IMG/VR virus record: IMGVR_UViG_3300042544_001590
Span: 143,490-207,489 of that record
DNA length: 64,000 nucleotides
Strand: one strand, 5' to 3'
A program made the translations under genes and the position numbers. The notes under the pieces are model-generated. The model was not told where the DNA came from, ran no database searches, and was given only the letters and a program-made list of their open reading frames with translations. Each line of letters opens with the position of its first letter. Positions within the stretch are counted from its first letter, which is position 1. This document shows positions 2,738-64,000 of the stretch, piece after piece.

Positions 2738-4387
2738 TCACTCATTCAAAAACAACCAATGAGCATAATTTATGGGTTTTTTAAATCCACGATCTCTATA
2801 CTCTCCGATGTTGTTGAGATGTCTGTCTTTATTGACCTGTTCGGTCATGTAACCCATGACACCTTCTTCATCTTCGGGATTATCTTTTTTGAGTTTGATT
2901 AGATATTTGGATATGGCATCAATTTTTTCATAATCTGGATCATCATCATCCATCATTTCTCTTAATTTTTCTTCAATTTCTGGTGCCGACAATCCAGCAA
3001 CTTCACCTTCAATATTAATCTTCGGTTTCTTTACACCCTTTTCCTTTAATTTTTTTTCAGCTTCCCATTTCTTACCTCGTTTTTCATATTCTCCTTGACG
3101 AATCATTCTCGCGTCTTCTCTAGATTGAGCTTTTTCAGCCTTTTCATCATCTCTTGAAGATTTACTCACTATTGATAGTTTAAGTTTCGATAGAATATTT
3201 CTCCAGTTTGATAATATTCCACTTTCTTCGTCAGTTATAATCCCCTCATTAACCAAATCATCCAGAAGACCATCATCCAAAGTATCATATACAGATTGAT
3301 ATCTGTCTTTCTTGAGTAGCATTTCCGCTTCGTTTTGGTATGAAGAAGTCTTTAAATTTCTTTTATAATATTTTAAAACCACTCCACCCGCATTACCCAT
3401 AACATTAATTATAAATTTTTGAATTTTTTCATCGGTGATGTCTTGATTAGATTCAATACGAGCCTCAATATTTCTCAGTACTTCATTAAATGTTGCTTGG
3501 GGGGTATTCTTCAACAAGTCTCTTTCATATTTGATGTTTTCTTGAGTGTCTAAACCCACACCTCTCATCTCTTCATCATTATCTTTATTCAAATTTGCAA
3601 TTTGTTGTTTATATGAAATCAACTGTTTTAGAGTATCCCTAAATATAGTAAGGGGAGTGTTGTTATCAACATCGAGTTCTGGTTGAACGAAATTTGTATC
3701 GGCATGATAGATAGACGAAGTTATACCTTTTGGTAATTTTTTAGATTTTTTAAGTTTTTGAATTATTGAACGGGCTTTATTTTGAATAATATAAGCCTCT
3801 TCCATACTCATACCAAACATTTCTTCTTTTTTTGCTGTTGTTCCATATGCGAAATTGGAGCTTCCTCTTTTTTGGAAGTGCTTATCAGCATAATCATAAA
3901 TATTTTTTTGATTTAATAATTTTTTTGCAAATTGCTGGGACAACGCAATTTCTGGATACGCTTTCACTATCAATCTCAACATAAATTCTTGTTGTAATTG
4001 TGTATTATCTGCATTTTTTGGAGCAAATTTAGCATATTCGGGTGTATATGCTCTTGTTTTTCTACTTCCTATTCTTTCTTCCGGCGTGAGTGGTCTGATT
4101 GCTAAATCTTGAACACTTTGGTCAAACCCAACACTTTTATTAATTCCAATCTTTGCAAGATTCTCCGCAGATAAAAAATTGAATAAAGATTTGGTCACGT
4201 ATTCCAACCTTCTATGTCCGAGAGTTGGGCTAGGTGGTGCTTTTGGGTGTCCTTTCATTATTCCCTGCACCTGTAAATATAAATTTTCAAAGTCTGGAAA
4301 TTCATTTCTCCAAAAGGGACTAAATCGAGCCATTTCGTTCAATACCTGCACTTTTTCCACTAGATAATCAAAGCCGTAATTTCTCAT
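2738..4387 (-). CDS. hypothetical protein, putative internal head/ejected protein
   Basis: 549 aa; TAAATA-N5-ATG upstream; N-terminus FDYLVEKVQVLNE. Confidence 0.6.
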   Translation of the reverse strand: MRNYGFDYLVEKVQVLNEMARFSPFWRNEFPDFENLYLQVQGIMKGHPKAPPSPTLGHRRLEYVTKSLFNFLSAENLAKIGINKSVGFDQSVQDLAIRPLTPEERIGSRKTRAYTPEYAKFAPKNADNTQLQQEFMLRLIVKAYPEIALSQQFAKKLLNQKNIYDYADKHFQKRGSSNFAYGTTAKKEEMFGMSMEEAYIIQNKARSIIQKLKKSKKLPKGITSSIYHADTNFVQPELDVDNNTPLTIFRDTLKQLISYKQQIANLNKDNDEEMRGVGLDTQENIKYERDLLKNTPQATFNEVLRNIEARIESNQDITDEKIQKFIINVMGNAGGVVLKYYKRNLKTSSYQNEAEMLLKKDRYQSVYDTLDDGLLDDLVNEGIITDEESGILSNWRNILSKLKLSIVSKSSRDDEKAEKAQSREDARMIRQGEYEKRGKKWEAEKKLKEKGVKKPKINIEGEVAGLSAPEIEEKLREMMDDDDPDYEKIDAISKYLIKLKKDNPEDEEGVMGYMTEQVNKDRHLNNIGEYRDRGFKKPINYAHWLFLNE

Positions 4388-4392
4388 ACTGT

Positions 4393-4415
4393 TATTTAGT
4401 CATAATAATTAAATA
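4393..4415. promoter_or_regulatory. back-to-back T4-type late promoters
   Basis: TATTTA 4393-4398 and TAAATA 4410-4415, each 5 nt from an ATG. Confidence 0.75.
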
Positions 4416-4420
4416 ATGTT

Positions 4421-5152
4421 ATGATTTCATTCTCACAATACTTTCTAATCAAAGAAGCGTTTGATACTGTCACCGAATTCATGTTAAATCCTGAAAATTC
4501 AGATAAGGATTATGATGAACTTATTGCAGAATTCGAGGCATCAGGTGGGGAGGTCATCGGTTCCGGTTCGTTTGGTATCGTGTATTCCCATCCTAAGTGG
4601 CCGTATGTTCTAAAGGTTTTCTCTTGGGATGATCCTTACTTAAAATTCGCTAGATATGCTCACGATAATCCTCATCCATCTTTTCCCAAATTCTTCGGCA
4701 AACCACAAAGAGTAGTCCCCCAATTCACACGATACAAGGACGAAGCAAAACAATATTTGGCTAGAATTGAAAGGCTTAATCCGACTCCTGTTAATGTTTT
4801 GGGACTAATAGATAATAATCTGATGCTTTATTTTCATTTGAAAGAAAATCCTAAATTAATACAAGATAGGACACAATTCATGAAATTGTCTTCCAAAGTT
4901 AAATCTTTACCAAAAGCTGTTTATAATCTGTTGGAAGGATGGTATCTGCTCCGCAGAGATTTACCTGATCTGAATCCCGATTTACACGGAGATAATGTGA
5001 TGATGCGAGATGATGGTCAATATGTTTGGGTTGATCCGGTCTGGACAGGAGATGAGAATATTGATAATCCTCTGACTGCCGCTATGACATCCAAGGATTA
5101 CGAACCTAGTAACATGCTTAAAGGAGGGAGAACAAAGTTGACTTCCCGATAA
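4421..5152 (+). CDS. protein kinase-like enzyme
   Basis: Gly loop GSGSFGIVY, VLKV lysine, catalytic loop DLHGDNVM, VWVDP. Confidence 0.8.
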   Translation: MISFSQYFLIKEAFDTVTEFMLNPENSDKDYDELIAEFEASGGEVIGSGSFGIVYSHPKWPYVLKVFSWDDPYLKFARYAHDNPHPSFPKFFGKPQRVVPQFTRYKDEAKQYLARIERLNPTPVNVLGLIDNNLMLYFHLKENPKLIQDRTQFMKLSSKVKSLPKAVYNLLEGWYLLRRDLPDLNPDLHGDNVMMRDDGQYVWVDPVWTGDENIDNPLTAAMTSKDYEPSNMLKGGRTKLTSR

Positions 5153-7753: not shown

Positions 7754-7759
7754 TAAATA
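7754..7759 (+). promoter_or_regulatory. late promoter
   Basis: TAAATA-N5-ATG 7765. Confidence 0.65.
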
Positions 7760-7764
7760 ATTAA

Positions 7765-8262
7765 ATGAATAATTATTTCAAAGAATTGGGTTTAATTTAT
7801 GAAAATATTTTATTAGAGGCAAATTTATCAAATAAAAATCTTTTTTATGGCTTAAAAAGTATGCTGGATGGTGGAGATGATTTTGTATTGTTGACTGATA
7901 GAAACATCGACACGGACAACCAACAAACTATGAGTTGTCAATTTATTTATAAAGGAACTAGACATATTAAAGTTTTCACAGGAGCATTTTTTGAAAATAA
8001 AAATTATAATAATGTTTCACATATTACTGTTACTATATTTGAAGTAACCCCAGAGGGTAAAACAATATCTAAATTGGATACTAATGTATTCTATAATAAA
8101 GGTGGACACCTTGATCTTTCACACGATCCAGTAATATCTACGGTTGAGAATTTTGTAAAATATGTAAAATCAGTATTGGATAGGTCTGATAGGGATGGTG
8201 ATGATGAAATATTACCACCGAAATCTCCAAGCCCGATGAGTAAAAAATTGTTATCAGTTTGA
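7765..8262 (+). CDS. hypothetical protein, putative internal head protein
   Basis: AT-rich ORF with late promoter; N-terminus LIYENILLE-A. Confidence 0.6.
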   Translation: MNNYFKELGLIYENILLEANLSNKNLFYGLKSMLDGGDDFVLLTDRNIDTDNQQTMSCQFIYKGTRHIKVFTGAFFENKNYNNVSHITVTIFEVTPEGKTISKLDTNVFYNKGGHLDLSHDPVISTVENFVKYVKSVLDRSDRDGDDEILPPKSPSPMSKKLLSV

Positions 8263-12770: not shown

Positions 12771-12772
12771 TT

Positions 12773-12901
12773 ATGGGTGATTGGATAGCTTTTATTTCAT
12801 TTTGGGTGGTTTTCACAGTTGGATTGATAGTATCAATTTGTGGTATTTTATCATTTTTAATTAAAATTTTAAACAAATTTACTGATTGGGAGAGACGATG
12901 A
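12773..12901 (+). CDS. small membrane protein (not in ORF track)
   Basis: 42 aa MGDWIAFISFWVVFTVGLIVSICGILSFLIKILNKFTDWERR; one TM segment; ATGA-coupled to the clamp gene. Confidence 0.55.
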   Translation: MGDWIAFISFWVVFTVGLIVSICGILSFLIKILNKFTDWERR

Positions 12902-13605
12902 ATTTAAATCTAAAGAAAAAAGAATTTCAATATCTCCTTCAAAGCCTCGCCCAAATCCATGACACGTGTGTTCTGGAACTGAGGGAAGATGGTATCCACG
13001 GGATTGCCTCCAGCGAGGATAATTCCATGTTTGCCCATGCTTATCTGTCAGGAGAGTATGAGGATCAGAATCTCAATCTACCTTCTCTGAAGAAGCTTTC
13101 CAAAGCTTTGGATATGATTTCTTCCGATGATATCAAGCTCAAGCTGAATAATAATCATCTGGAATACAAGAACAAGTCTCTGAAGTTCAAGTATCATCTC
13201 CATGAAGATGGGGTGATCACCAAACCGAAGTTGTCTCTGGAAAAGATTCGTAATTTTGAATACAATCTCCAATTTGATCTGGATTTTGAGTTCCTTTCCA
13301 ATGTTCTCCAAAAATCATCCATCACAAATACCAACAAGCTCTATCTATTTACTGAGAACGATTCTCTGGTGTGGAAGCTGGGGGATGAGACGGTTCCCAA
13401 TAGTGATACTCTGAGCATCGTGGGAGATGAGGTGGATTTTGAATTGGAATCTTTTATTCTAAAGATCGATAATCTAAAGCTGCTGTCCAAGGTATCCAAG
13501 ACGGGAAACATTTTCAAGATCAATTCCAAGCTTGGGGTCGGCTGCATCATCACGAAGAGTGGAGATTTTGAGATGGAATACATTTTATCGAGCCTTAAAA
13601 ACTAG
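12898..13605 (+). CDS. DNA polymerase sliding clamp (gp45-like)
   Basis: 235 aa with two-domain beta/alpha clamp pattern, in replication cluster. Confidence 0.7.
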   Translation: MNLNLKKKEFQYLLQSLAQIHDTCVLELREDGIHGIASSEDNSMFAHAYLSGEYEDQNLNLPSLKKLSKALDMISSDDIKLKLNNNHLEYKNKSLKFKYHLHEDGVITKPKLSLEKIRNFEYNLQFDLDFEFLSNVLQKSSITNTNKLYLFTENDSLVWKLGDETVPNSDTLSIVGDEVDFELESFILKIDNLKLLSKVSKTGNIFKINSKLGVGCIITKSGDFEMEYILSSLKN

Positions 13606-13948: not shown

Positions 13949-14186
13949 CGATATAACTTTGAAAGCAATAAAGACTGGCATCCAGAACAAAGCCTATGAT
14001 GAGGGTTGGGAGCGCATCTTCGCCAAGAAGACCGCTCATGAATGGCTTGAAACAATGCCCGATATTCGGCTGCTTGATCCTGATGGATGGAGATGGGATG
14101 ATGGGGTGACTATGGATACTCCTATCAAATGGTCGGATTTCAATAATCGTTTGAACCACTCAACGCTCACTGGATTGATTAAATAA
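13938..14186 (+). CDS. hypothetical protein
   Basis: 82 aa with LDPDGW motif; GTG start. Confidence 0.55.
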   Translation: MSYNDITLKAIKTGIQNKAYDEGWERIFAKKTAHEWLETMPDIRLLDPDGWRWDDGVTMDTPIKWSDFNNRLNHSTLTGLIK

Positions 14187-14190
14187 GTAA

Positions 14191-14790
14191 ATGCGTCCGT
14201 TTTACGATTTTTATCTAGAGAAATTTTCTGATTTGGGTAAATTATCCCCCGAACAATTGAGAAAAGGTCAGAGACTTGATCCAAACAACCCCGATAACTT
14301 CCAACAGGTGAGCGGGAGGGTGTTTTCTCAAGCCCTTACCAACATCACAAAGAATGATGAATTTCGCCGAACGGTAAATCCAAAGTTTTTCAAGAATATC
14401 AAGAACAATCTCAGTGTTTATAAAGTTGAAGAATATCAGCGCATGAAATGTTTCCTTGGAAAGAACAATTCCAGTGGTTTTGCCATCAAGGATGGGGATG
14501 AATTGGTGTCAGTATTCTCTTCTCAAGAATCTTCTGGTAATGCGCTGGTTCAGGAAGCGATTCGGCAAGGTGCCACACGATTGGATTGTTTTGCCACACA
14601 AGATGAAAACGGTAATATCAAGGATGAGGGTTTATACAGGCTTTATAGTAGGAATGGGTTTGTGATTGACAAAACGCTGAACATGGACGGAGAATATCCT
14701 GTCAAGAATGGGATATCCTACTTCGTGGACGAAAATGGAAATGTTGATCCCACCAATCCTACCGTGGTGATCTTCATGGTTAAAAACTAG
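14191..14790 (+). CDS. GNAT-like domain protein, putative internal head protein
   Basis: ELVSVFS...GNALVQEAIRQGATRLDCF...LYSRNGF; TAAATA (14180)-N5-ATG. Confidence 0.55.
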   Translation: MRPFYDFYLEKFSDLGKLSPEQLRKGQRLDPNNPDNFQQVSGRVFSQALTNITKNDEFRRTVNPKFFKNIKNNLSVYKVEEYQRMKCFLGKNNSSGFAIKDGDELVSVFSSQESSGNALVQEAIRQGATRLDCFATQDENGNIKDEGLYRLYSRNGFVIDKTLNMDGEYPVKNGISYFVDENGNVDPTNPTVVIFMVKN

Positions 14791-49345: not shown

Positions 49346-49380
49346 AAGAAGAGGGGATCGTGATGATTCCCTCTTTTTTT
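49346..49380 (+). terminator. intrinsic terminator
   Basis: AAGAGGGGATC-GTGAT-GATTCCCTCTT followed by a T run. Confidence 0.85.
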
Positions 49381-49393
49381 GTTAAGTATTATC

Positions 49394-50191: not shown

Positions 50192-50202
50192 TAAATAAAA
50201 AT

Positions 50203-51075
50203 ATGTCCTCTGGTTGTCCAACAATTCCTTTATCGTGTCTAACACCTGAAAACATCTTTGCTGGTGTCTATCGCCCCAATTGTGGGGGATTTGCCGATCC
50301 ATCCAACTTTCAGGCGGAAAGAGCCATATTCAATTCCCAATTCGGGGAGCTTATCAACAATTATGGGGTGGAGATTGATTATTTTGTCAATACTTTCAAT
50401 CCCAAGGCGATGAACTCCATCTATGGGGAACATACGCTCATGTATTGGCTTGGTCCAACAACCATCAAGGCATATATCCAGATGGAAAACGGTTCCCCCA
50501 TATATGCTCTGGCTGGTATGGATTCTCCCGATACCCTGACACTATATTTACATATTGATGACTTCAACACCAAGTTTGAAGGACTCAGCATTTTTGATGG
50601 ATTTTTATACGATGAATCAAATAATAAGATTTTAACGGAAACTGGGGAACCGATCATTGTTGATAGGGACGATGGGCCATTTGTTCCCGAACCTAAATCA
50701 CAGGATAAGATTCGTGTAACACCATTTGGTTGCGATAGACCAAATGGTAGGGGAGCCAAGATATTTGAGGTTACGGAAGCCATGGATGAGGATCAGAGCG
50801 AACTCAATCCTGCGATGGGACATTATGTGTGGAGACTGAAAGCTGTCCGTAGCGAACATAACTTCACCACCAACGAGCCAAGGGAGGAATATAACCAGCA
50901 GATTGCGGACAATTCCTATTTTGGTAAGCTCTCCTCTGTCATGTTCCCCGAACTCTCAAGTGTGTTGGATGATAACAAGGTATATACGCAAAATTCCGAT
51001 GAAATCGTGCAAAGGGACGTGTTTCCTCCATCTACGGGAGGAAGTGATGGGAGTGTTTACGGTAATTATTTCTAA
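50203..51075 (+). CDS. neck/head closure protein (gp14-like)
   Basis: ELI..YG....Y, YGE, EP...D.I, IFEV, YVWRLK; precedes terminase. Confidence 0.6.
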   Translation: MSSGCPTIPLSCLTPENIFAGVYRPNCGGFADPSNFQAERAIFNSQFGELINNYGVEIDYFVNTFNPKAMNSIYGEHTLMYWLGPTTIKAYIQMENGSPIYALAGMDSPDTLTLYLHIDDFNTKFEGLSIFDGFLYDESNNKILTETGEPIIVDRDDGPFVPEPKSQDKIRVTPFGCDRPNGRGAKIFEVTEAMDEDQSELNPAMGHYVWRLKAVRSEHNFTTNEPREEYNQQIADNSYFGKLSSVMFPELSSVLDDNKVYTQNSDEIVQRDVFPPSTGGSDGSVYGNYF

Positions 51076-51084
51076 ATAATACAA

Positions 51085-52854
51085 ATGGCAGCTAAAAAGA
51101 AACATGAATACATGGGGAATCCGAATCTCCCCACTGCCAATGCGGTGTTTGAATATACACCGGAAATGGTGGTGGAAATTCAAAAATGTAAAGAGTCTCT
51201 AATACATTTTGCTGAAAATTATTTTTATATTATCGATCCCGATGAAGGTAAAAAGGTTATTCCACTCTTTGATTACCAAACGAGATTATTGAAGGCGTTT
51301 GAAGATTTCAAACAAAATATAGTTTTGAGTTCTCGCCAGAGCGGAAAAACGACGGTGATGACTATATTAGCATTACACGTAGCATGTTTTGAAAATCATA
51401 AAAATATTGTTATTGTTGCGAATAAAGAGGAAACAGCTAAAAACATATTCAAACGTGTTAAGTTGGCTTATGAAGAATTGCCTAACTGGTTAAAACCCGG
51501 AATTAAAAAGTGGGGAGATACTTCAATGGAATTGGCGAATGGTAGTTGTATTGAAATTTCAACCACTACTGGAAACGCAGCGAGGGGTAAATTTGTCAAT
51601 TTGTTGCTATTGGACGAATTAGCATTTATCGATCCGCCAAGCATAGTTGAAGACTTCTGGAGATCGGTGTATCCAACAATTTCCCGCGCTAAAACATCTA
51701 AAATTCTTATTACATCAACACCAAACGGAGTTGGTAATTTGTTTCATAGATTATATACTGGATCGGTAAAAGGTGAAAACAGATTCCACTATGAAAGAAT
51801 TGATTGGTGGGAAGTTCCGGGTCGTGATGAAGAATGGAAAAAAGATCAAATTAAAGATTTAGGTTCCCACGAGGCGTTCATGCAGGAATATGGGAACGAA
51901 TTCCTAGACAATAGCCAACAATCCATTGATGAAGCCCTATTTGACCGTCTCAAAAACGAATGCCGTGAACCCAAACACATCCTCAAGGAAGGTGCCTATA
52001 AAATATGGGAAGAATATGATCCCGAAAAAATATATGTTATTGGGGGGGACGTTTCCGAAGGTCTTGGTCTGGATGCATCCGTTCTCCAAGTTCTGGATGT
52101 CACCAATCCCAAGGAAATTATACAAGTTGCCGAATACTGGACAAATACCAAAGGGCCATCGGAATTCACCAACGAAGTGGTGGATGTTTGTGGACATTGG
52201 GGAAATCCTCTGCTATTGATTGAGCGAAACAACCAAGGAACGGGTGTTTGTGACACTTTGGCGAACACCCACATGTATCAGAACCTTGTGTCTTGGGGAG
52301 CTAAGGAAGCGCATAAGAATAAGCAGAACGGTATGATTTCCCATATCAACACCAAATATAAAGCGGTGGAGAACCAAAGATATTTCGTCAATGAAGCGCA
52401 ATCTGTGGTATTCCGCAACATTGACACGCTGAAAGAATTTAAGAATTTTGTGCGCTACCCCAATGGCTCTTGGAAAGCCAAAAGTGGGGAACACGATGAC
52501 CGTGTGATGGCATTCGTATGGGCATTGATGGCTCTCTACAAGGATATCACGGAATTATATTTTGAAATTGAGGAATTGGATGATTGCGATAAGCCTCTTG
52601 TGATCAAACCCATTGATCAGGGACTCCACCAATACAGATCGGCAACTTCCATCTACACCAACGAAGAAGTGCCTAAAATTGAGAATTCCAACATTGCCCC
52701 CATGCTCTTTGGAGGATACGGGGGGGCTGCTGTTAGTGACATGGCGGAATTGGAAGCTGCGGGATGGGCATTGCCTGATCATTCGGTGTTCTCCAATCCT
52801 GAAAGGAATATCAATCCTGATCAGTGGGCAGCGATGGAGAAATATTTCGGTTGA
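51085..52854 (+). CDS. terminase large subunit (T4 gp17-like)
   Basis: Y.GNPNL, SRQSGKT, LDELAF, STPNG, QEY, DVSEG.G.D, IERN, HDDRVMA. Confidence 0.95.
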   Translation: MAAKKKHEYMGNPNLPTANAVFEYTPEMVVEIQKCKESLIHFAENYFYIIDPDEGKKVIPLFDYQTRLLKAFEDFKQNIVLSSRQSGKTTVMTILALHVACFENHKNIVIVANKEETAKNIFKRVKLAYEELPNWLKPGIKKWGDTSMELANGSCIEISTTTGNAARGKFVNLLLLDELAFIDPPSIVEDFWRSVYPTISRAKTSKILITSTPNGVGNLFHRLYTGSVKGENRFHYERIDWWEVPGRDEEWKKDQIKDLGSHEAFMQEYGNEFLDNSQQSIDEALFDRLKNECREPKHILKEGAYKIWEEYDPEKIYVIGGDVSEGLGLDASVLQVLDVTNPKEIIQVAEYWTNTKGPSEFTNEVVDVCGHWGNPLLLIERNNQGTGVCDTLANTHMYQNLVSWGAKEAHKNKQNGMISHINTKYKAVENQRYFVNEAQSVVFRNIDTLKEFKNFVRYPNGSWKAKSGEHDDRVMAFVWALMALYKDITELYFEIEELDDCDKPLVIKPIDQGLHQYRSATSIYTNEEVPKIENSNIAPMLFGGYGGAAVSDMAELEAAGWALPDHSVFSNPERNINPDQWAAMEKYFG

Positions 52855-53111: not shown

Positions 53112-53621
53112 ATGAAGTGTTATTCTGATTACATCACCGATCTAAAAAATGATGAAGTCTTTGTATTCACTTCGAATTCATATGGTTTTCATGGTGCTGG
53201 GTCGGCTGGTTACGCATCTTTTGGAGAATTTGGTAATGTCTGGAGAAATCATGATTATGGTAGCAAACCAGATGGGTGGAAAGGTAGATGGAATGTGAAA
53301 GGAATTGCGGAAGGTATTCAAGAAGGACGGGAAGGAAAATCCTATGCGATAAGGTCTGTATTAGCACCGGGATGTAGAAGATCAATAACCAAGGGACACC
53401 TAAAAGCTAACATTCAGGATTTTTATGATTTTGCGTGTGAAAATCTTGATTGGAAATTCTATGTTGCTCAAGATGCCAAACCGGGATACAATGGTTATTC
53501 AGTGGAAGAGATGGTGGAAATGTGGTCTGTTGAATATCCTCCAGATAATGTTTATTTTTATAAACCATTCTATGATTTATTAAAGGAGCGTTTCCCATTA
53601 AATATGTTTAGTGTCAACTGA
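53112..53621 (+). CDS. phage non-structural protein, possibly macrodomain-like
   Basis: EVFVF.SN..G.HGAGSA, G.SYAI, KFYV. Confidence 0.5.
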   Translation: MKCYSDYITDLKNDEVFVFTSNSYGFHGAGSAGYASFGEFGNVWRNHDYGSKPDGWKGRWNVKGIAEGIQEGREGKSYAIRSVLAPGCRRSITKGHLKANIQDFYDFACENLDWKFYVAQDAKPGYNGYSVEEMVEMWSVEYPPDNVYFYKPFYDLLKERFPLNMFSVN

Positions 53622-54809: not shown

Positions 54810-54854
54810 ATTGCTGTTTAGGAAATTTTTGGCGGGGATTTGCTAAATAGTAAT
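54810..54854 (+). promoter_or_regulatory. RNA hairpin enclosing the sheath late promoter
   Basis: About 20-bp stem with G-U pairs and one mismatch; TAAATA 54844-54849, ATG 54855. Confidence 0.6.
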
Positions 54855-57257
54855 ATGGCAACACGCACAATAAATTCGGCTGGGGTAGAGATATTTGAGA
54901 GAGATTTAAGTCTAGTCGCACAGACGAACGTAGGCACGAATGTCTTTGTAGCTGGATATACCCCCCAAGGTTATTCCGACGAGGTTTTGAAAATCACCAC
55001 CAGAGATGAACTGGAATCAATCTACGGAACCCCAACCAATAGCGCAGAACGCTATTTCTATTACACTGTCCGCGAACTACTCAACTCTCCTGCAAACATC
55101 TACACTTTCCGCCTTCCATATGGATCGGGAACTGGAGATGGATTTGGAACACAACATTCCGCTCTTGTATATCCTGTTGTTGCCGCTACTCCAACTGATG
55201 TAACAACAACCAGAAGCCTTGATCTTTCTGCTGCAACCTATTTCCTTGGAAAACCCTATCAGATTACCCTATCTGAAACGGAATTTGCCCAAGCCATGGA
55301 AGGAACCCTCTTCGATTGGTCTTCCACTGCTGGAAGTAGAGCGGAACTTATTTCTGGATTTTCCACTGACCCTCTTAGTGCGCTAACCTTAAAACAACGT
55401 ATGGGCAATGCTGGTGTCATTGTCTTTGATAAAGCCCAAACCACGATCAATAGCCAATTTGAAGGTTATTATGTCGGTATCGCAGATAACGTCAATCTCA
55501 ATCCTGCATCCAATTTTGATGCAATCACCCGCGCCTATACCACAAGCCTTACTGCTGGGGTGATTTCGGATTATACCCAGATTCCAAACGGAACTCTCCA
55601 ATTCAATCTCTCAGCTACTGCTGGAGGTGCCACTGGTAGTATCTCCCAAGTCATGGAGAACCTTACCGATTATAACATCGATGGTAGGGAAGATGATGAC
55701 CTTCTGAATGTTGGTGTGTTTAAGCTCCGCAAGAGTGTTTATGCAACCGAAGCGTTTAAACTGGATTATGTGCTTGATGACCGTATCGTGGGTTCCATTG
55801 ATACCTTCAGAACTCAACTCAATCCAAATGGTGGACCATCGGTTCCATTCTTCCTTGAGACTCAGGATACCAATTCCCGCAACGTGGAAATCATGGTCAA
55901 CCCATTCATCTCCAACAAATTCACACAATCCTCGCTGGATTCTTCGGGTAATCCTCTCAAGAAAATCCGTGTGGTGACTGAGAGCTTGCTTAATACTGAA
56001 TATGCATCCATTTCTGCTGCATTAGGTATTACAACCACTACCTCTACCGCGCCCGCTCTTAGTGCTAACTTAACGGTAGCCAATACATATGCTCTTTCTG
56101 GTCTTGATGCAAGCGTGGGAGTCGCAAATGCCCTGTATCCTCTTGGTGTTTACAACCCTGTCAAGATTACCCAAAAGATCATCGGCAATGTTCCAACCAA
56201 GATCAACCGCGCTCTGGAATCCATCAAGAATGATGAAATCTATGACATTGATGTGGTTGTCGAAGGTGGTCTGGGAACGATCTTTACGATGATGTCTGCT
56301 GCGGGAACTGATTACTATGATGACACCCTCTACAATACCGCTCTGAAGACCAAGGTGGATACCCTGAGAACTTCGGGTGACATTTCCAATGATGCGGTTG
56401 CAACCGATCTCCGTGCCAATTACAGCGCGATCTTCAACCAATTTGAGAATTTCTGTAACCTTCCAAGCAATACTGGTGGTCGTGGAGACTGTGTGTTCAT
56501 TGCTGATCCAATCCGCCACATCCTTGTTACGGGTAGAAACACCAAGATTCTCTCCGATAGAAACAAAAATTTCCAAAAGGATGTTTATTGGGCAATGCGT
56601 CACCAATTTGAATTGGAAAACACTTCCTATGCTGCCACCTATGGTAACTGGATTCTGGGTTATGATGATTTCAGCGGTGAAAAGGTTTGGCTTCCATTCT
56701 CTGGATACCAAGCTGCTATCATGGCCCGTAGCGATGCTGCGGAATTCCCATGGTCTGCTCCTGCCGGATTTACCCGTGGTCTGGTGACTAATGCTCTGGA
56801 TATTGCAATCAATCCGAATCAGAAACAGCGTGATGAGTTCTACAAGATCAACATCAACCCTGTCATGTTCTCTCCCGCCCAAGGTGTGGTTGTGTTTGGT
56901 CAGAAAACTATGAGCCGCAAACCAAGTGCATTTGATCGTATCAATGTCCGTAGGCTCTTCCTCGCTCTGGAAAGACCTACCAAGAAAGCTGCTCAATTCT
57001 TCGTGTTTGAACCCAACAACGAATTCACCCGCACTCGCTTGGTGAACGTTCTCACTCCGATCTTCGAATTTGCGAAACAGAACGGCGGTTGCTACGATTA
57101 TCTGATCGTTTGTGACGAACGGAATAATACTCCCCAAGTCATTGATACCAATGAGTTGAAAGTTGACATTCTTATCAAACCAACGAGAACCGCCGAGTTT
57201 ATTTTAATAACTTTTACGGCTACCCGTAGTGATGCCAACTTTGAAGAGTTGATTTAA
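54855..57257 (+). CDS. contractile tail sheath protein (gp18-like)
   Basis: S.GVEI.E.DLS, PW.APAG..RG, INP, FGQKT, SAFDRINVRRLFL, FEPN. Confidence 0.95.
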   Translation: MATRTINSAGVEIFERDLSLVAQTNVGTNVFVAGYTPQGYSDEVLKITTRDELESIYGTPTNSAERYFYYTVRELLNSPANIYTFRLPYGSGTGDGFGTQHSALVYPVVAATPTDVTTTRSLDLSAATYFLGKPYQITLSETEFAQAMEGTLFDWSSTAGSRAELISGFSTDPLSALTLKQRMGNAGVIVFDKAQTTINSQFEGYYVGIADNVNLNPASNFDAITRAYTTSLTAGVISDYTQIPNGTLQFNLSATAGGATGSISQVMENLTDYNIDGREDDDLLNVGVFKLRKSVYATEAFKLDYVLDDRIVGSIDTFRTQLNPNGGPSVPFFLETQDTNSRNVEIMVNPFISNKFTQSSLDSSGNPLKKIRVVTESLLNTEYASISAALGITTTTSTAPALSANLTVANTYALSGLDASVGVANALYPLGVYNPVKITQKIIGNVPTKINRALESIKNDEIYDIDVVVEGGLGTIFTMMSAAGTDYYDDTLYNTALKTKVDTLRTSGDISNDAVATDLRANYSAIFNQFENFCNLPSNTGGRGDCVFIADPIRHILVTGRNTKILSDRNKNFQKDVYWAMRHQFELENTSYAATYGNWILGYDDFSGEKVWLPFSGYQAAIMARSDAAEFPWSAPAGFTRGLVTNALDIAINPNQKQRDEFYKININPVMFSPAQGVVVFGQKTMSRKPSAFDRINVRRLFLALERPTKKAAQFFVFEPNNEFTRTRLVNVLTPIFEFAKQNGGCYDYLIVCDERNNTPQVIDTNELKVDILIKPTRTAEFILITFTATRSDANFEELI

Positions 57258-59154: not shown

Positions 59155-59175
59155 TCCGAAAAGCTAAATAATAAC

Positions 59176-59745
59176 ATGGCGACCACAATTGAAAACTTTT
59201 TTAATCAGGCTTCTCAAAAGCAATTTGCAAGGGACTTCCTATTCCGTGTTAAACAAATCAGTGTTACTGGTCTTTCCTTAAATGGGGAGACTGATCTGAT
59301 TTATGCAAGAACCGCAACTTTTCCGGGACGAAACATCCAGAATAAGCAAGTCAACTTCAGTGGTCAAACATTCAACCTACCGGGAAAATCTGAATATCCC
59401 GGAGCAGAAGCATGGTCTATTGAATTCTATGTTGATCAAGACCTTGATATTCGTTCCAAATTGGAAGCTGCATCGAGAGTTTTATTCGATAATGAAACGA
59501 CCACTGGTAACATTTGTATGCCGGGATATGAATCCGTGATTACTCTTGATGTTCTACAAATCCCATGTCAACGTGGATCGAATGTTACATCTGGGGGGGA
59601 ACTTCAAGTTGGTAAAACAATTGAACTGATTGGTGCTTCCCTTAGAGACATTGGTGAAATTTCTTATGAGATTGCTGACGGAACGGGAGAAGTTAAAACC
59701 TTCAATGCGACTTTTGCATATCATTTCTACAAGAAATTTACGTGA
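59176..59745 (+). CDS. tail tube protein (gp19-like)
   Basis: R.FLFRV, PGR, W.I.FY.D, F.ATFAY; TAAATA-N5-ATG. Confidence 0.8.
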   Translation: MATTIENFFNQASQKQFARDFLFRVKQISVTGLSLNGETDLIYARTATFPGRNIQNKQVNFSGQTFNLPGKSEYPGAEAWSIEFYVDQDLDIRSKLEAASRVLFDNETTTGNICMPGYESVITLDVLQIPCQRGSNVTSGGELQVGKTIELIGASLRDIGEISYEIADGTGEVKTFNATFAYHFYKKFT

Positions 59746-59772
59746 GCTTAATCTTACGGATTAAGTATCTAC

Positions 59773-60375
59773 ATGGCTGGTCCTCAAATTAACGATTTCC
59801 TACAGGCATTTTCTGGTGATGCCAAATACTGCCTATCAATACCAGTATTATGGACTGTATCCATTGATGGTGTCACGGAATCGGCAATCAATAGCGTTCT
59901 ATCGGATGCTGGACAGAAATGGCAAGCTAAGATCGCTCCCAATGCCATGACGAAGAGCGGCACGATCCTCCCAGCCCAAGCAGTTACAATCCCACAAGAA
60001 TCATCCAATTTCTCCGCAATGGTAGCGGGGAATTCGTATGGTGGTTTCCTGCCGGGGTATGCTATGGATTCCCGTGCCGATTTCCTCTCCCGCAGCTTCT
60101 CCATCAACTTTCTAGAAACGAGACAGGATTTGGAACATGAGTATTTTCGTCCTTGGCAGATCGCCATTGGTATCAAGGGTTTGGTTGAGCGTGGAGTGAA
60201 TCTGAAGTCCACCATCACCGTGAAACAATACACCAATGATGGACAGCTTAGGAAAGGATACCGATTCAAAAGGGCATTCCCCACCGCTGTTGAGGGATTC
60301 ACCATGGATTATAATAACACGGATTATCCAATCAAGAGTGTGACATTTGCTTGTGAAAATTATGAGCAATTATGA
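59773..60375 (+). CDS. tail tube paralog/baseplate-tube initiator (gp54/gp19-like)
   Basis: INFLET, FRPW, AFPT, VTF; TAAGTA-N5-ATG. Confidence 0.65.
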   Translation: MAGPQINDFLQAFSGDAKYCLSIPVLWTVSIDGVTESAINSVLSDAGQKWQAKIAPNAMTKSGTILPAQAVTIPQESSNFSAMVAGNSYGGFLPGYAMDSRADFLSRSFSINFLETRQDLEHEYFRPWQIAIGIKGLVERGVNLKSTITVKQYTNDGQLRKGYRFKRAFPTAVEGFTMDYNNTDYPIKSVTFACENYEQL

Positions 60376-61300: not shown

Positions 61301-61322
61301 TTTTAATCTTAAATAAACACAT

Positions 61323-62057
61323 ATGGAAAACAACGTTCAACAATTCCTTGACAGCATTCAGGAACTCAAGGCAAAGAAATTCAAGGCATACCAAGCTTCT
61401 ACCAAAAAGGAAGTGGATTGCTCTCCCCTCACCTTCAAGCAACAGAAAGATATCATCGCCACGGTAGCGGACGGGACGGTGGGAGTTCTCAAGTTCCAAA
61501 AAATCCTCAATGACATTCTCATTGAAAATACCGAATCCGACACCCTTAAAGTGGAGGATAAGCTACCCCTGATTCTCAGAATTCGGGGAGAAAGCCTTGG
61601 ATATGATCTGAAGCTGGATGGAGAAGTCGGCAACATTGAAAGTAATGTCGAAAGCTCCCGTAAGATCAAATCTCCCAAGGAAAAGACGATCAATGGTGCT
61701 GTGGATGTGGTTCTGGCTACTCCCACTCTCAAGGATGAGAATAAGGTCATCAATTACTCCATTGAAATTCTCAAAAAGGATGGGGATAAGGATGCAGGTA
61801 AAAATATCGGTAATATCTACACTTTTGAAATCGTAAAATTTATCAAATCCGTGAAATTCGGGGAAAATGAGATTGTCTTTGCCGATACTCCCGTGAAGGA
61901 TCGTGTGCGGATCGTAGAAAATCTACCACTTTCCATTAATAAGGAAATTATCAAATATATCGAAGCTTTCAAGGAGGATGAACAATCCCATCTGAAAGTT
62001 ACGATCAATGGTGAGGAAAAGGCGTTTGATATTGATGTGAGTTTCTTTGATAATTGA
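61323..62057 (+). CDS. baseplate hub assembly protein (gp26-like)
   Basis: PLT.KQQK, D...L.LRIR..S.G, P.L, FF C-terminus. Confidence 0.65.
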   Translation: MENNVQQFLDSIQELKAKKFKAYQASTKKEVDCSPLTFKQQKDIIATVADGTVGVLKFQKILNDILIENTESDTLKVEDKLPLILRIRGESLGYDLKLDGEVGNIESNVESSRKIKSPKEKTINGAVDVVLATPTLKDENKVINYSIEILKKDGDKDAGKNIGNIYTFEIVKFIKSVKFGENEIVFADTPVKDRVRIVENLPLSINKEIIKYIEAFKEDEQSHLKVTINGEEKAFDIDVSFFDN

Positions 62058-62076
62058 TGCCTGATTAAATAATAGA

Positions 62077-64000
62077 GTGAATGTCGCTTTATTAGAAGAA
62101 CTTTTAGGATTGCTGAAAACGCTGAATGAAACCATTGGCGTTCCGCAGGGGGAATCTATAGAGGATAAGAACGTATTGCAGGGTAATAATCCCTCCGATC
62201 CCAACAAAAGGGTGACACCAACGCTCAATAGCAATGAGCGCAAGAGAACCACGGAAATCGCTTCCCTGTTCGCCAAAACATTCTTCGATTTCCAAAAGAA
62301 GAAGACACCCGATAAGGCGATCAAGACTTCCATTCAAAAAGTAACGGGTAAAACAGGGGAGAAAATCCAACAAGGGGGTGATAAGGTTGACAAAAAATCT
62401 TCTTGGTGGAAGATTCTTTTGCCATTAGTGATAGGTATTGGAGCATTAATAACTGGATTGATGACAGATGGCCCATTTAAAGGTGCTTTGAAAATACTTG
62501 CTAGATTAGGGTTGGGTATCGTTCAGAGGCAAATTAAAATGATACTCAGATTAGCACGGGGACTAATGCCCGATAAGTTAATAGGTAACTTGTTTGAAAA
62601 ATTAATACCGAAAAATTTCATAGGTAATTTAATTAAAAGATTATTACCCATTGATGATATTATCAAAGTTATCACAGGGGGTATGACAGGATTTATAAAT
62701 TCCCTGAAAGGGATGATAGGTGCGCCTTTCAAAGCTCTGGGGGGTATGGTAAAGGGTGGTGGTATAATGGCTAAAATGTTGAAATTTTTAAAGCCGATGC
62801 TATTGGTTCTCAAGAGAATCCCTCTAATTGGAACTATCATATCTTTCGGTTTTGCCATCTCTCGTTTCAGTAGTGGAGATACTGTTGGGGGTGTAATCGA
62901 TGTTTTAAGCGGATTGGCGGGATTACTCGATTTGGTAGCTCCCGGACTTGGCACAACTTTATCCATAGGCTTGGATGTTCTCAACGCATTTTTGGATGTT
63001 AAAACTGGTGGTGCCACTGGTAAACAACAAGGAGCTAAAATGGACTTGCTTGGAGATATGGCTAAAGGAATTGGTAAGTGGATATGGAAAAACGCTCTAT
63101 GGATTCCAGTTCTTGGAGGATTTAAGAGAATGTCTATGTCTTGGGATGCTTTCAAAAGCGGTGATATTATGGGTGGTCTTTATCAATTTGGTATGTCATT
63201 GATATCATTTACCGGAATGGTACCGCTTGTTACTGGTATTGAGATGCTGCTAGGATTTGGGGGAAAGAAAGAAAAGGATAAATCATTATCTCCTAAAACG
63301 GGATGGTTCTCTGGTTTAAAATCGTGGATTAAGAAGAAGTTAAAAGACTTGCCATGGGTTATTAGGAAGCCTTTGGAATGGTTTGGTATTTTGGATGATA
63401 CTGATGATAATACTGCCATTAAAACAAGTTTAATGAATAGTGCATATGATAACTTAAAAAAGTTTGCTTCTGCTATGTGGAGCGGAATTACGAGTGGTTT
63501 AACTTTAGTGGGTGATGCGTTGGTAAAAGGTATTACAATGCTTTATAATAATGTAAAGCAAACGCTTAATGACGCGGCTAAAGCGGTAAAGAAATCCGCA
63601 GTAGAGGTTCACAACAAGCAAGTCAAAAAATATCAGGGTCTTGCAGAAAAAGATGCAGCTACTAGGGTGGTGGAAAGTGTGAAAAATCCAATTGGAACCA
63701 TATATGGGGCAGGAGCGGAAATAGTCGGCATTGGAGCTACACGGAAACGTGCTGCTGCAAGCAAGGCGGCGGGTGATGAGACGCAAAAAAGGTTAATAGA
63801 ACGCGGAATCCTCAATCCAGATGGAACTCCTAAAAGCTACGATGAACGGGTAAAATCGGGTGTATCAAAACCGCGCCCATCACAGGAGAAAACGGTGGTA
63901 TCCGATGCAATCAATACTGTAAAGATTCCCCAAAAATCACAGGAGAAAACGGTGGTATCCGATGCAATCAATACTGTAAAGATTCCCCAAAAATCACAGG
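62077..64000 (+). CDS. putative tape measure/hub protein, 3'-truncated by window edge (not in ORF track)
   Basis: TAAATA-N5-GTG; frame read as open to the window end; Gly/Leu/Lys amphipathic helices, LKRIPLIG, hydrophobic segments. Confidence 0.7.
   Translation, partial: MNVALLEELLGLLKTLNETIGVPQGESIEDKNVLQGNNPSDPNKRVTPTLNSNERKRTTEIASLFAKTFFDFQKKKTPDKAIKTSIQKVTGKTGEKIQQGGDKVDKKSSWWKILLPLVIGIGALITGLMTDGPFKGALKILARLGLGIVQRQIKMILRLARGLMPDKLIGNLFEKLIPKNFIGNLIKRLLPIDDIIKVITGGMTGFINSLKGMIGAPFKALGGMVKGGGIMAKMLKFLKPMLLVLKRIPLIGTIISFGFAISRFSSGDTVGGVIDVLSGLAGLLDLVAPGLGTTLSIGLDVLNAFLDVKTGGATGKQQGAKMDLLGDMAKGIGKWIWKNALWIPVLGGFKRMSMSWDAFKSGDIMGGLYQFGMSLISFTGMVPLVTGIEMLLGFGGKKEKDKSLSPKTGWFSGLKSWIKKKLKDLPWVIRKPLEWFGILDDTDDNTAIKTSLMNSAYDNLKKFASAMWSGITSGLTLVGDALVKGITMLYNNVKQTLNDAAKAVKKSAVEVHNKQVKKYQGLAEKDAATRVVESVKNPIGTIYGAGAEIVGIGATRKRAAASKAAGDETQKRLIERGILNPDGTPKSYDERVKSGVSKPRPSQEKTVVSDAINTVKIPQKSQEKTVVSDAINTVKIPQKSQ
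63880..64000 (+). repeat. perfect 57-bp tandem repeat, 2 copies plus start of a third
   Basis: Encodes SQEKTVVSDAINTVKIPQK in frame. Confidence 0.95.

What the first reader, a model, noticed from the sequence alone, without database searches (positions are those of the whole stretch)
4385..62079. Late genes appear to be systematically leaderless (TAAATA-N5-ATG)
Seen: TAAATA or TAAGTA lies exactly 5 nt before start codons at 4387, 4421, 7765, 14191, 18025, 20887, 20921, 26141, 30150, 37139, 40740, 40774, 41570, 45126, 46248, 47921, 48696, 49394, 50203, 54855, 59176, 59773 and 62077. It is 6 nt before 33201, 37103, 51085 and 53611. None of these has room for a Shine-Dalgarno sequence, and four divergent pairs fit two promoters into 33-35 bp. 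Known: the T4 late promoter TATAAATA occupies about -13 to -6. Inference: +1 coincides with the start codon, so most late genes have their own leaderless mRNA. This could let the phage shut off leadered host translation. The rule also corrects several start calls.
Basis: partly seen in the sequence, partly recalled or inferred. Interest (0 to 1): 0.7.

Follow-up and report, generated by a model that had tools for sequence, protein, structure and literature searches.

The report
Late promoters fused to start codons
In this uncultured freshwater T4-like phage, promoter boxes sit so close to start codons that many messages probably begin at the AUG, and this applies to all three promoter classes, not only the late genes.

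Summary
All 27 coordinates check out, and one site (18359) was missed. TAARTA-N5-ATG occurs 22 times in the window against 2.2 expected, and 58 times in the 207-kb genome against 5.8. Relatives have the same excess; T4 and a cyanophage do not.

The box matches a T4-family late promoter. A gp55 homolog is encoded. TAAATA lies where T4's TATAAATA (-13 to -6) would put +1 on the A of ATG. The pyrimidine at -12 matches the known Aeh1 variant CTAAATA. Orthologs keep the box and its spacing where the flanks are unrelated.

Leaderless late mRNAs are therefore the best reading, but no RNA data could be obtained.

- Only about a third of the window's genes carry the box. The rest follow in operons, often with 4-nt overlaps.
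- The trait is not late-specific. An early-type motif (TAAAAACTAG-N3-TAnAAT-N6-ATG, about 90 genes) and canonical TTGACA-N16-TAnnnT-N5-7-ATG promoters (17 against 0.8) share the register, and no gene class shows Shine-Dalgarno enrichment.

This argues against a late switch that shuts off leadered host translation. Host unknown. Precedent: Thermus phage phiYS40.

The parts
4385..4398 (-). Late box TAAATA-N5-ATG, start 4387 (549 aa); divergent partner of 4421
4410..4423 (+). Late box TAAATA-N5-ATG, start 4421 (243 aa)
7754..7767 (+). Late box TAAATA-N5-ATG, start 7765 (165 aa)
14180..14193 (+). Late box TAAATA-N5-ATG, start 14191 (199 aa)
   Evidence: box kept in G1 and G2 orthologs with unrelated flanks
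18014..18027 (+). Late box variant TAAGTA-N5-ATG, start 18025 (116 aa). A TTGACA lies 15 nt upstream of the box.
   Evidence: the G1 ortholog has TAAATA
18348..18361 (+).
20885..20898 (-). Late box TAAATA-N5-ATG, start 20887 (138 aa); divergent partner of 20921
20910..20923 (+). Late box TAAATA-N5-ATG, start 20921 (116 aa)
26139..26152 (-). Late box TAAATA-N5-ATG, start 26141 (209 aa, tail-fibre/tail-protein-like). The TAA of the box is the stop codon of the upstream gene.
30148..30161 (-). Late box TAAATA-N5-GTG, start 30150 (741 aa)
33199..33213 (-). Late box TAAATA-N6-ATG, start 33201 (854 aa)
37101..37115 (-). Late box TAAATA-N6-ATG, start 37103 (602 aa, gp6-like baseplate wedge); divergent partner of 37139
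37128..37141 (+). Late box TAAATA-N5-ATG, start 37139 (426 aa)
40738..40751 (-). Late box TAAATA-N5-ATG, start 40740 (612 aa); divergent partner of 40774
   Evidence: all 11 relatives' loci that reach the ortholog's start keep TAAATA-N5-ATG
40763..40776 (+). Late box TAAATA-N5-ATG, start 40774 (255 aa)
41559..41572 (+). Late box TAAATA-N5-ATG, start 41570 (238 aa)
45115..45128 (+). Late box TAAATA-N5-ATG, start 45126 (367 aa)
46237..46250 (+). Late box TAAATA-N5-ATG, start 46248 (290 aa); the one window site with a full TATAAATA
47910..47923 (+). Late box TAAATA-N5-ATG, start 47921 (122 aa)
48685..48698 (+). Late-type box at an in-frame internal ATG (48696) of an ORF that probably starts at 48294. 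It is either an internal promoter for a shorter product or a chance copy.
49358..49396 (+). Hairpin (dG -13.2) plus T7 run, followed 2 nt later by TAAGTA-N5-ATG (start 49394, 265 aa). This leaves at most 14 nt for any leader.
   Evidence: the same arrangement is kept in G1 and G2
50192..50205 (+). Late box TAAATA-N5-ATG, start 50203 (290 aa)
51073..51087 (+). Late box TAAATA-N6-ATG, start 51085 (589 aa, terminase large subunit)
53599..53613 (+). Late box TAAATA-N6-GTG, start 53611 (201 aa)
54844..54857 (+). Late box TAAATA-N5-ATG, start 54855 (800 aa, tail sheath)
59165..59178 (+). Late box TAAATA-N5-ATG, start 59176 (189 aa, tail tube)
59762..59775 (+). Late box variant TAAGTA-N5-ATG, start 59773 (200 aa, tail-tube-like)
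62066..62079 (+). Late box TAAATA-N5-GTG, start 62077 (over 641 aa; the ORF runs off the end of the window)
12886..13605 (+). Candidate gp45 sliding clamp, the activator of T4-type late transcription
   Evidence: phrog_223 'DNA polymerase processivity factor', E 1.1e-8. The Pfam clamp profiles did not detect it.
42283..43197 (-). gp44-like clamp loader
   Evidence: tblastn with T4 gp44, E 3e-34

Best explanation
TAA(A/G)TA is the -10-like box of a T4-family late promoter, read by host RNA polymerase carrying the phage's gp55-like sigma factor. The box occupies -11 to -6, as do the last six bases of T4's TATAAATA. Transcription should therefore start on the A of the ATG (or GTG) that lies 5 nt, sometimes 6 nt, downstream.

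The first gene of each late transcription unit would then be made from a leaderless mRNA whose 5'-terminal AUG is bound directly by ribosomes without a Shine-Dalgarno sequence. Downstream genes of the unit are translated by stop-start coupling or from A/T-rich spacers that also lack Shine-Dalgarno sequences.

The same architecture holds for the phage's two other promoter classes, so it is a whole-genome design matched to an unknown host. It is not a late-specific trick.

Shown here: the motif, its register, its conservation, its class restriction, the gp55 homolog and the absence of Shine-Dalgarno sequences.
Inferred: that the box is a promoter, that +1 falls on the A of the start codon, and the mode of translation.
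For: 1. Statistics and spacing. There is a sharp peak at exactly N5.

2. Factor. The gp55 homolog lies at genome 132842-133291. It is 40% identical to T4 gp55 over residues 7-113, matches phrog_234 at E 1.9e-23 and PDB 7d7c chain F at E 3.6e-13, and sits next to gp47/gp46 homologs, its close neighbours in T4. No other sigma factor and no T7-type polymerase was found.

3. Register. The T4 box spans -13 to -6 (PMC1524935). T4 gp55 flips out A-12, A-9 and A-8 (PMC7892883). Phage Aeh1 uses CTAAATA starting at -12. Here the consensus is a-[C/T]-TAAATA, with no conservation further upstream and an A/T-rich N5, as in T4.

4. Start-site signature. The -1 base is a pyrimidine in 49 of 61 late starts and never G, and +1 is A or G. 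Over all three promoter classes, 147 of 163 have a pyrimidine at -1, against 51% at coupled starts. Start codons are ATG in 155 of 163 and never TTG.

5. Three unrelated promoter motifs share one register. The early type AAAACTA-N15-ATG occurs 79 times against 0.8 expected, and its TAnAAT hexamer ends 6 nt before ATG. The canonical type TTGAC[AT]-N16-17-TAnnnT-N5-7-[AG]TG occurs 17 times against 0.8. A -35/-10 pair with 16-17 bp spacing is a DNA-level signal.

6. Comparative evidence. Relatives G001, G002 and G003 show 49/3, 45/0 and 22/0 (observed/control); T4 shows 10/5 and cyanophage S-SSM4 shows 1/1. Eighty loci with 58-92% capsid-protein identity show the N5 peak in every identity bin. 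At orthologous starts the box positions are 78-91% identical against 45-52% in the flanks. The box follows the start codon when that codon shifts by one position.

7. Local context. Divergent starts lie 33-35 bp apart, so an upstream promoter for either gene would lie within or beyond the partner's start region. At window 49358-49396, a terminator hairpin and T-run lie 2 nt before the box.

8. Gene content. Boxes precede sheath, tube, portal, baseplate wedge, terminase, tail-protein and virion structural genes.

9. Shine-Dalgarno motifs are not enriched anywhere in the genome.
Against: - No transcript 5' end was observed. No RNA run holds this phage, and the two read-laying attempts gave only scraps from relatives.
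- gp33 was not detected. gp45 is supported only by a weak PHROG match.
- The hexamer alone is not specific. About 135 TAAATA copies lie away from starts, in sense and antisense equally (63 and 60), so it is only mildly depleted against the 183 expected.
- Position -12 is a pyrimidine here, whereas T4 gp55 buries an adenine there. Only 2 of the 7 T4 pocket residues are identical.
- The major capsid gene has no box at its ATG. In a relative, an RNA-library contig runs at least 46 nt upstream of that ATG.
- In 10 of 61 cases the TAA of the box is the upstream gene's stop codon, so stop-start coupling could contribute to the fixed spacing there.
- Gene classes rest on my own crude ORF caller.
Confidence: 0.72

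Rival explanations
1. The box is an RNA-level translation signal, for example an A/U-rich enhancer or a binding site for protein S1 or a phage protein. It would lie in the leader of mRNAs that start further upstream, replacing the Shine-Dalgarno sequence.
For: The genome has no Shine-Dalgarno enrichment, and internal genes have A/T-rich upstream regions with A at -3 and -5. The box sits where a ribosome-binding site would. In 10 of 61 cases its TAA is the upstream stop codon.
Against: Only 61 of about 348 genes carry the box. Coupled and internal genes, including the capsid gene and gp32, lack it.

Two other motifs with clear DNA-level promoter anatomy occupy the same register: TTGACA-N16-TAnnnT, and a conserved motif of about 20 bp.

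Divergent pairs 33 bp apart, and a terminator 2 nt before the box, leave no room for an upstream promoter.

The box matches the known gp55-type sequence, and gp55 is encoded.
Confidence: 0.08
2. The box is a real late promoter, but initiation falls a few nucleotides away from the A. If it falls upstream, the mRNAs have very short leaders of 1-5 nt. If it falls downstream, another AUG would have to be used.
For: Start-site choice by bacterial RNA polymerase wobbles by 1-2 nt (general knowledge). N6 variants exist: 8 in my genome gene calls, 4 of them in the window. N7-N10 variants also exist, for example TAAATA-N10-ATG before the homing-endonuclease gene at window 57328.
Against: The strong pyrimidine(-1)/purine(+1) signature falls exactly at the start codon. 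The peak at N5 is sharp compared with N4 and N6 (1 and 7 against 48). ATG is almost the only start codon used. Leaders of 1-5 nt behave as leaderless in practice.
Confidence: 0.12
3. The box marks an RNA processing site. A phage or host endonuclease would cut polycistronic late RNA just before each AUG, giving leaderless mRNAs after transcription.
For: T4 is known to use sequence-specific mRNA cleavage (RegB; general knowledge). Few intrinsic terminators separate the late genes.
Against: No RegB-like gene was looked for or seen. The box equals the gp55 promoter consensus. Divergent pairs would need antisense read-through transcripts. The other two classes carry -35/-10 promoter anatomy.
Confidence: 0.04
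4. The pattern is a compositional or annotation artefact of an A/T-rich genome.
For: The genome is 39% G+C, and TAAATA is common (200 copies against 183 expected).
Against: Shuffle, Markov and reversed-pattern controls give 10- to 20-fold fewer hits. The peak falls on a single spacing. In the genome, 56 of 58 sites open ORFs. The pattern is conserved in relatives with unrelated flanks and absent from T4 and S-SSM4.
Confidence: 0.01

Closest known systems
Phage T4 late promoters (TATAAATA at -13 to -6) read by gp55, with gp33 and the gp45 sliding clamp
   Same: A gp55 homolog is encoded next to gp47/gp46 homologs. The box shares TAAATA at the equivalent of -11 to -6. There is no -35 conservation. 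The stretch between box and start is A/T-rich. The box precedes structural genes. A clamp loader and a probable clamp are present.
   Different: T4 shows no excess of TAAATA 5 nt before ATG: 10 sites against 5 in the control. From general knowledge, T4 late mRNAs have leaders with Shine-Dalgarno sequences. Here the box is fused to the start codon at N5. Position -12 is C or T rather than A, and -13 is mostly A. The exact TATAAATA is hardly used: 21 copies, 2 of them at starts. gp33 was not detected.
Aeromonas phage Aeh1 late promoter variant CTAAATA, starting at -12
   Same: It has the same pyrimidine at -12 in front of TAAATA, and is linked to a diverged gp55 (PMC1524935).
   Different: The fixed fusion to the start codon is not mentioned in the passages of that paper retrieved here. 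The present phage is not close to Aeh1: no phage in the collection searched exceeds 37% terminase or 34% capsid-protein identity.
Thermus phage phiYS40 (and, from memory, P23-45): middle and late mRNAs mostly leaderless
   Same: A large lytic phage in which most middle and late transcripts lack a leader. The promoters lie directly before the start codons (my recollection, not checked here). The paper read here proposes a link to altered host translation, with IF2 raised and IF3 lowered (review PMC3594737).
   Different: The phage lineage and host are different, and those promoters are read by the host sigma factor rather than by gp55. Here the early-type genes are leaderless in design too, so no temporal contrast is evident. 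No effect on initiation factors is known here.
Host-type leaderless genes with a -10 element adjacent to the ORF (Deinococcus-Thermus; Actinobacteria)
   Same: A -10 hexamer a few bp before the start codon, no Shine-Dalgarno sequence, and AUG or GUG starts. The annotation-correcting value is the same (PMC12340547; PMC4007540 abstract).
   Different: Those are cellular genomes using the housekeeping sigma factor. They still use GGAGG for leadered genes, whereas this phage shows no Shine-Dalgarno signal for any gene class.

Membership tests
T4-type late transcription system (gp55/gp33/gp45 with a TATA-box promoter) | Phage-encoded gp55 sigma-like factor | tested here: met
   Genome 132842-133291. 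BLASTP against T4 gp55 gives 40% identity, E 6e-19. phrog_234 matches at E 1.9e-23 and PDB 7d7c_F (gp55) at E 3.6e-13.
T4-type late transcription system (gp55/gp33/gp45 with a TATA-box promoter) | 8-bp box TATAAATA at -13 to -6 | tested here: inconclusive
   Six of the eight positions (TAAATA) are kept. Position -12 is C or T in 84% of sites, as in Aeh1's CTAAATA, and -13 is A in 54%. Position relative to +1 cannot be measured without RNA.
T4-type late transcription system (gp55/gp33/gp45 with a TATA-box promoter) | No conserved -35 element; A/T-rich segment between the box and the start site | tested here: met
   Information content is about 0-0.1 bit per position from -20 to -14. The N5 stretch holds 0-14% G at each position.
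T4-type late transcription system (gp55/gp33/gp45 with a TATA-box promoter) | gp45 sliding clamp and gp44/62 loader | tested here: inconclusive
   gp44 is clear (E 3e-34). The clamp candidate at window 12886-13605 matches phrog_223 at E 1.1e-8. Pfam PF02916 and PF09116 and tblastn found nothing.
T4-type late transcription system (gp55/gp33/gp45 with a TATA-box promoter) | gp33 co-activator | tested here: inconclusive
   phrog_254 and tblastn with T4 gp33 found nothing. gp33 is small and evolves fast, so absence is not shown.
T4-type late transcription system (gp55/gp33/gp45 with a TATA-box promoter) | Promoters precede late (virion and packaging) genes | tested here: met
   Sheath, two tube-like genes, portal, gp6-like wedge, terminase, tail proteins and a virion structural protein carry the box. 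Some non-structural genes carry it too: a tRNA nucleotidyltransferase and an HNH endonuclease.
Leaderless mRNA | Primary 5' end at, or within a few nt of, the start codon | not testable with these tools
   No RNA run holds the phage. The contigs that could be laid came from relatives and showed no 5' ends at box sites.
Leaderless mRNA | -10-type promoter element ending 5-7 nt before the start codon | tested here: met
   The late box ends at -6. The early-type TAnAAT and the sigma70-type TAnnnT end mostly at -7 (N6), with N5-N7 variants.
Leaderless mRNA | No Shine-Dalgarno sequence; AUG (rarely GUG) start | tested here: met
   None of 61 late starts has an SD core. Across the promoter classes, 155 of 163 starts are ATG, 8 are GTG and none is TTG.
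phiYS40-type temporal switch to leaderless translation | Leaderless design restricted to middle and late genes, contrasting with leadered early or host mRNAs | tested here: not met
   About 92 early-type genes and at least 10 sigma70-type genes have the same promoter-to-ATG register.

The most novel reading that the evidence does not exclude
A large, abundant and wholly uncultured clade of freshwater T4-like phages may express its whole genome without Shine-Dalgarno sequences. The clade has at least 599 capsid-gene relatives in IMG/VR, and no cultured member exceeds 34% capsid-protein identity.

Every transcription unit of all three temporal promoter classes would begin on the AUG itself, and downstream genes would be translated by stop-start coupling. 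That implies one of two things. Either the unknown host relies mainly on leaderless or 70S-type initiation, or the phage reprogrammes host ribosomes from the first minutes of infection.

The gp55-type late promoter fused to the start codon would be the first such case in the T4 superfamily.
Probability: 0.5. Interest if true: 0.75.

Novelty: new variant of a known kind. Interest (0 to 1): 0.62.

Why it matters
If the 5' ends are confirmed, this would be a T4-family phage whose gp55 late promoters, and its other promoters, are fused to start codons. That gives a natural system for studying leaderless translation outside Thermus and Actinobacteria.

It gives a simple sequence rule, box-N5-ATG, for calling gene starts and temporal classes in hundreds of uncultured lake phage contigs.

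It also gives a clue to the translation biology of an unidentified, probably abundant, freshwater host. More distant relatives carry AAGGAG or AGGAGG before the capsid gene, which suggests that the trait tracks the host.

Tried and rejected
RNA evidence:
- Two run searches found only DNA holders, all lake-water metagenomes, and no RNA holder.
- Laying eight metatranscriptomes at 80-85% likeness on the sheath-tube and capsid regions gave only scraps of relatives' conserved coding parts and no 5' ends at box sites.

Near relatives: megablast against the phage collection found nothing. The best cultured relatives reach 37% terminase and 34% capsid-protein identity.

Host inference:
- An epimerase gene scanned against 185,579 genomes gave at most 45% identity, scattered over Actinomycetota, Pelagibacteraceae and others.
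- Ribosomal protein bS21 and WhiB are absent. No host is assigned.

Late-transcription partners: gp33 and the Pfam gp45 profiles gave no hit. The 250-aa gene next to gp44, which I suspected was gp45, is RmlA.

Generic scan of window 44500-64000: neither sigma70-type promoters (77 against 65 +/- 7.7) nor terminators (13 against 15.3) are enriched.

Hexamer avoidance: depletion away from starts is only mild, and equal in sense and antisense, so it is not informative.

Literature: searches for leaderless plus gp55, T4-like or cyanophage, and for the early motif string, found no prior description.

No structure or complex prediction was run. None would bear on the claim.

Full report
**What the window is.** The window is the last 64 kb (G000:C1:143490-207489) of a 207,489-bp IMG/VR virus record with direct terminal repeats and 39% G+C. 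The DNA is held by lake-water metagenomes.

It is a distant T4-like myovirus. In the window I found these homologs:

| Window position | Product |
|---|---|
| 885 | UvsX |
| 6424 | gp41-like helicase |
| 11389 | gp32 |
| 12886-13605 | probable gp45 clamp |
| 19006 | gp61 primase |
| 42283-43197 (-) | gp44 clamp loader |
| 37103 (-) | gp6-like baseplate wedge |
| 51085 | terminase large subunit |
| 54855 | tail sheath |
| 59176, 59773 | two tube-like proteins |

Elsewhere in the genome lie gp43, portal, major capsid protein, gp46/gp47 and a gp55 homolog. No cultured phage is close. Terminase identity is at most 37% and capsid-protein identity at most 34%, and megablast finds nothing.

- All 27 coordinates check out, three of them with GTG starts. 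One further site, at 18359, was missed.
- TAARTA-N5-ATG occurs 22 times in the window against 2.2 +/- 1.5 in shuffles. It occurs 58 times in the genome against 5.8 +/- 2.2 in Markov-2 simulations.
- The spacing histogram has a single spike. Of 200 TAAATA copies, 48 have ATG exactly 5 nt downstream, against 0 to 9 at every other spacing up to 29.
- In the genome, 56 of 58 sites open ORFs. In the window, all 28 N5/N6 sites open ORFs of at least 105 aa.
- A weight matrix built from the sites finds only 71 hits in the genome. Almost all of them are gene starts, including several that my ORF caller had missed.
- None of the 61 late-box starts has an SD core at -18 to -4.

**What the box is.** The genome encodes one sigma-like factor, and it is a gp55 homolog. 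It is 40% identical to T4 gp55 over residues 7-113 and matches phrog_234 at E 1.9e-23 and PDB 7d7c chain F at E 3.6e-13. It sits beside gp47/gp46 homologs, its close neighbours in T4.

The literature read here supports the match:
- It places T4's TATAAATA at -13 to -6, says T at -13 is poorly conserved in relatives, and describes the Aeh1 variant CTAAATA starting at -12 (PMC1524935).
- The cryo-EM structure shows gp55 capturing A-12, A-9 and A-8 (PMC7892883).
- T4 late promoters have no -35 conservation and an A/T-rich stretch downstream of the box (PMC2988020).

The consensus here is a-[C/T]-TAAATA-(A/T-rich N5)-ATG, with no information upstream of -13. If TAAATA aligns with T4 positions -11 to -6, +1 is the A of the start codon. 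A and G alternate at -8 (TAAATA or TAAGTA), even between orthologs.

Of the seven T4 pocket residues, L54 and Y97 are identical. The others are substituted: R57K, F86I, H95F, N13S and T99N (my reading of the alignment).

**Evidence that the register reflects transcription starts rather than a ribosome signal.**

1. *Start-site signature.* The -1 base is a pyrimidine in 49 of 61 late starts and never G. Start codons are ATG in 55 and GTG in 6.

2. *Two further promoter-like classes share the register.*
 - An early-type motif, tTAAAAACTAG-a-n-TAnAAT-N5-c-ATG, has 132 core copies, 123 of them on one strand. They lie mostly in the small-gene region at 7-70 kb. AAAACTA-N15-ATG occurs 79 times against 0.8 expected.
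 - Canonical TTGAC[AT]-N16-17-TAnnnT-N5-7-[AG]TG promoters occur 17 times against 0.8 +/- 0.7. They precede, among others, the gp43 gene and the operon that holds the helicase, gp55 and gp47/gp46.
 - In both classes the -10 hexamer ends 6 nt before ATG, which is the standard -12 to -7 geometry.
 - Over the three classes, -1 is a pyrimidine in 147 of 163 starts, against 51% at coupled starts. TTG starts are absent.
 - A -35/-10 pair with 16-17 bp spacing can only act on DNA.

3. *Local context.*
 - Six divergent pairs place two boxes within 32-35 bp.
 - At window 49358-49396 a hairpin and T7 run end 2 nt before TAAGTA-N5-ATG. At genome 20253 a strong terminator is followed by TATAAT-N6-ATG.

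4. *Conservation.*
 - Three large relatives show 49/3, 45/0 and 22/0 (observed/control). T4 shows 10/5 and cyanophage S-SSM4 shows 1/1.
 - Eighty loci around capsid genes of 58-92% identity show the N5 spike in every identity bin.
 - At orthologous starts the box positions are 78-91% identical against 45-52% in the flanks. The box often survives where the flanks are unrelated.
 - When the start codon moves by one codon, the box moves with it.

**What does not follow.**
- About 28 of roughly 84 window genes carry the box. Thirty-three others overlap or abut the preceding gene; across the genome the commonest gap is -4, seen 38 times. 'Most late genes have their own mRNA' is therefore too strong.
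- The major capsid gene has a 63-nt A-rich spacer with neither box nor Shine-Dalgarno sequence. An RNA-library contig from a relative runs at least 46 nt upstream of its ATG.
- Non-promoter starts have A/T-rich upstream regions, with A at -3 in 61%, and no G-rich motif.
- Early-type and sigma70-type genes are built the same way, and no gene class uses Shine-Dalgarno sequences. The design is therefore genome-wide and probably mirrors the host's translation. It gives no late-specific means of out-competing leadered host mRNAs.
- More distant relatives of the clade carry AAGGAG or AGGAGG before the capsid gene, and some of them lack the N5 register. This suggests the trait changes with the host.

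**Host.** The host is unknown. The TTGACA-type -35 element seems to me hard to reconcile with a Bacteroidota housekeeping sigma factor, judging from my recollection of its consensus (not checked here). bS21 and WhiB are absent, and an epimerase gene gives only scattered hits of at most 45% identity.

**Limits.**
- No 5' end was measured.
- gp33 was not found, and gp45 rests on one weak profile match.
- The hexamer alone is not specific, with about 135 copies away from starts.
- Gene classes come from my own simple ORF caller.
- Site 48696 is internal to an ORF that probably starts at 48294.

**Comparison with known systems.** The promoter type is known from T4 and Aeh1, and systematic leaderless middle and late transcripts are known in Thermus phage phiYS40 (PMC3594737). 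A -10 element adjacent to ORFs is established for Deinococcus-Thermus (PMC12340547). Literature searches found no description of this fusion in a T4-like phage or of the early motif.

I class the finding as a new variant of a known kind. I put 0.72 on the late mRNAs being leaderless and about 0.5 on the whole-genome reading.

Noticed in passing
window 14783-14808, 18676-18700, 20123-20147, 21271-21294 (also about 13600); mainly genome 7-70 kb: A second, stronger fixed-distance motif: tTAAAAACTAG-a-n-TAnAAT-N5-c-ATG. The core AAAACTA has 132 copies, 123 on one strand. AAAACTA-N15-ATG occurs 79 times against 0.8 expected, in front of about 92 mostly small genes. It looks like an early or middle promoter with its -10 hexamer at -12 to -7 of the ATG. 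No factor that reads it was identified. Relatives G001 and G002 have it too.
   Followed up: partly
window 5138-5174, 8277-8313, 54213-54249; genome starts 70853, 81388, 100483, 102700, 103674, 130156, 139914: A third class: canonical TTGACA-N16-17-TAnnnT promoters that end 5-7 nt before ATG or GTG (17 against 0.8 expected). They include the gp43 gene and the helicase-gp55-gp47/46 operon. They suggest gp43 starts at genome 139914, not 139896.
   Followed up: partly
whole genome; e.g. window 11359-11391 (gp32) and genome 107494-107556 (capsid gene spacer): No Shine-Dalgarno enrichment in any gene class: GGAG, GAGG or AGGA occur in 9.8% of upstream regions against 11% at random positions. Internal starts have A/T-rich upstream regions with A at -3 and -5. 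Thirty-eight gene pairs overlap by 4 nt.
   Followed up: partly
window 48685-48698, inside the ORF at 48294-49322: A late-type box before an in-frame internal ATG. It could give a product shortened at the N-terminus (208 aa), or it could be a chance copy.
   Followed up: no
window 57264-57330: A perfect 15-bp hairpin with flanking A and T runs follows the sheath gene and looks like a two-way terminator. It is followed by TAAATA-N10-ATG of a homing-endonuclease gene, the one late-type box in the window with room for a short leader.
   Followed up: no
window 57328-59154; genome 88887-90572 and 103757-105208: Three paralogous HNH/homing-endonuclease genes (phrog_559 and phrog_3339) are inserted among structural genes, between sheath and tube and near the portal and capsid genes. 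The window copy also carries a Mom-like domain.
   Followed up: no
window 43194-44961 (-) and 2082-2726 (-); genome 4426-5439: Sugar-nucleotide genes lie next to the clamp loader: RmlA (E 8e-67 to solved RmlA structures) and an epimerase/dehydratase-like gene. A Mom-like DNA-modification gene and a second epimerase gene are also present. Together they hint at DNA or surface glycosylation.
   Followed up: no
loci L200, L207, L219 (capsid-gene relatives, 61-63% identity): These more distant relatives carry AAGGAG or AGGAGG before the capsid gene and lack the N5 register. L200 and L219 also share a different upstream motif, CATAATTATTATAT. The leaderless design therefore seems to vary within the clade.
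   Followed up: partly
genome 132842-133291 (gp55 homolog): The homolog is 149 aa against 185 aa in T4, and the alignment covers only T4 residues 7-113. Pocket residues L54 and Y97 are kept. N13, R57, F86, H95 and T99 are replaced by S, K, I, F and N. This may relate to the pyrimidine at -12 and the A/G choice at -8 in the box.
   Followed up: partly
window 26139-26152 and nine other late boxes, e.g. genome starts 101656, 103231, 108883, 110051, 127645: In 10 of 61 late sites, the TAA of the box is also the stop codon of the upstream gene (gap of 8 or 9 nt). One hexamer thus serves as both stop codon and promoter box.
   Followed up: no
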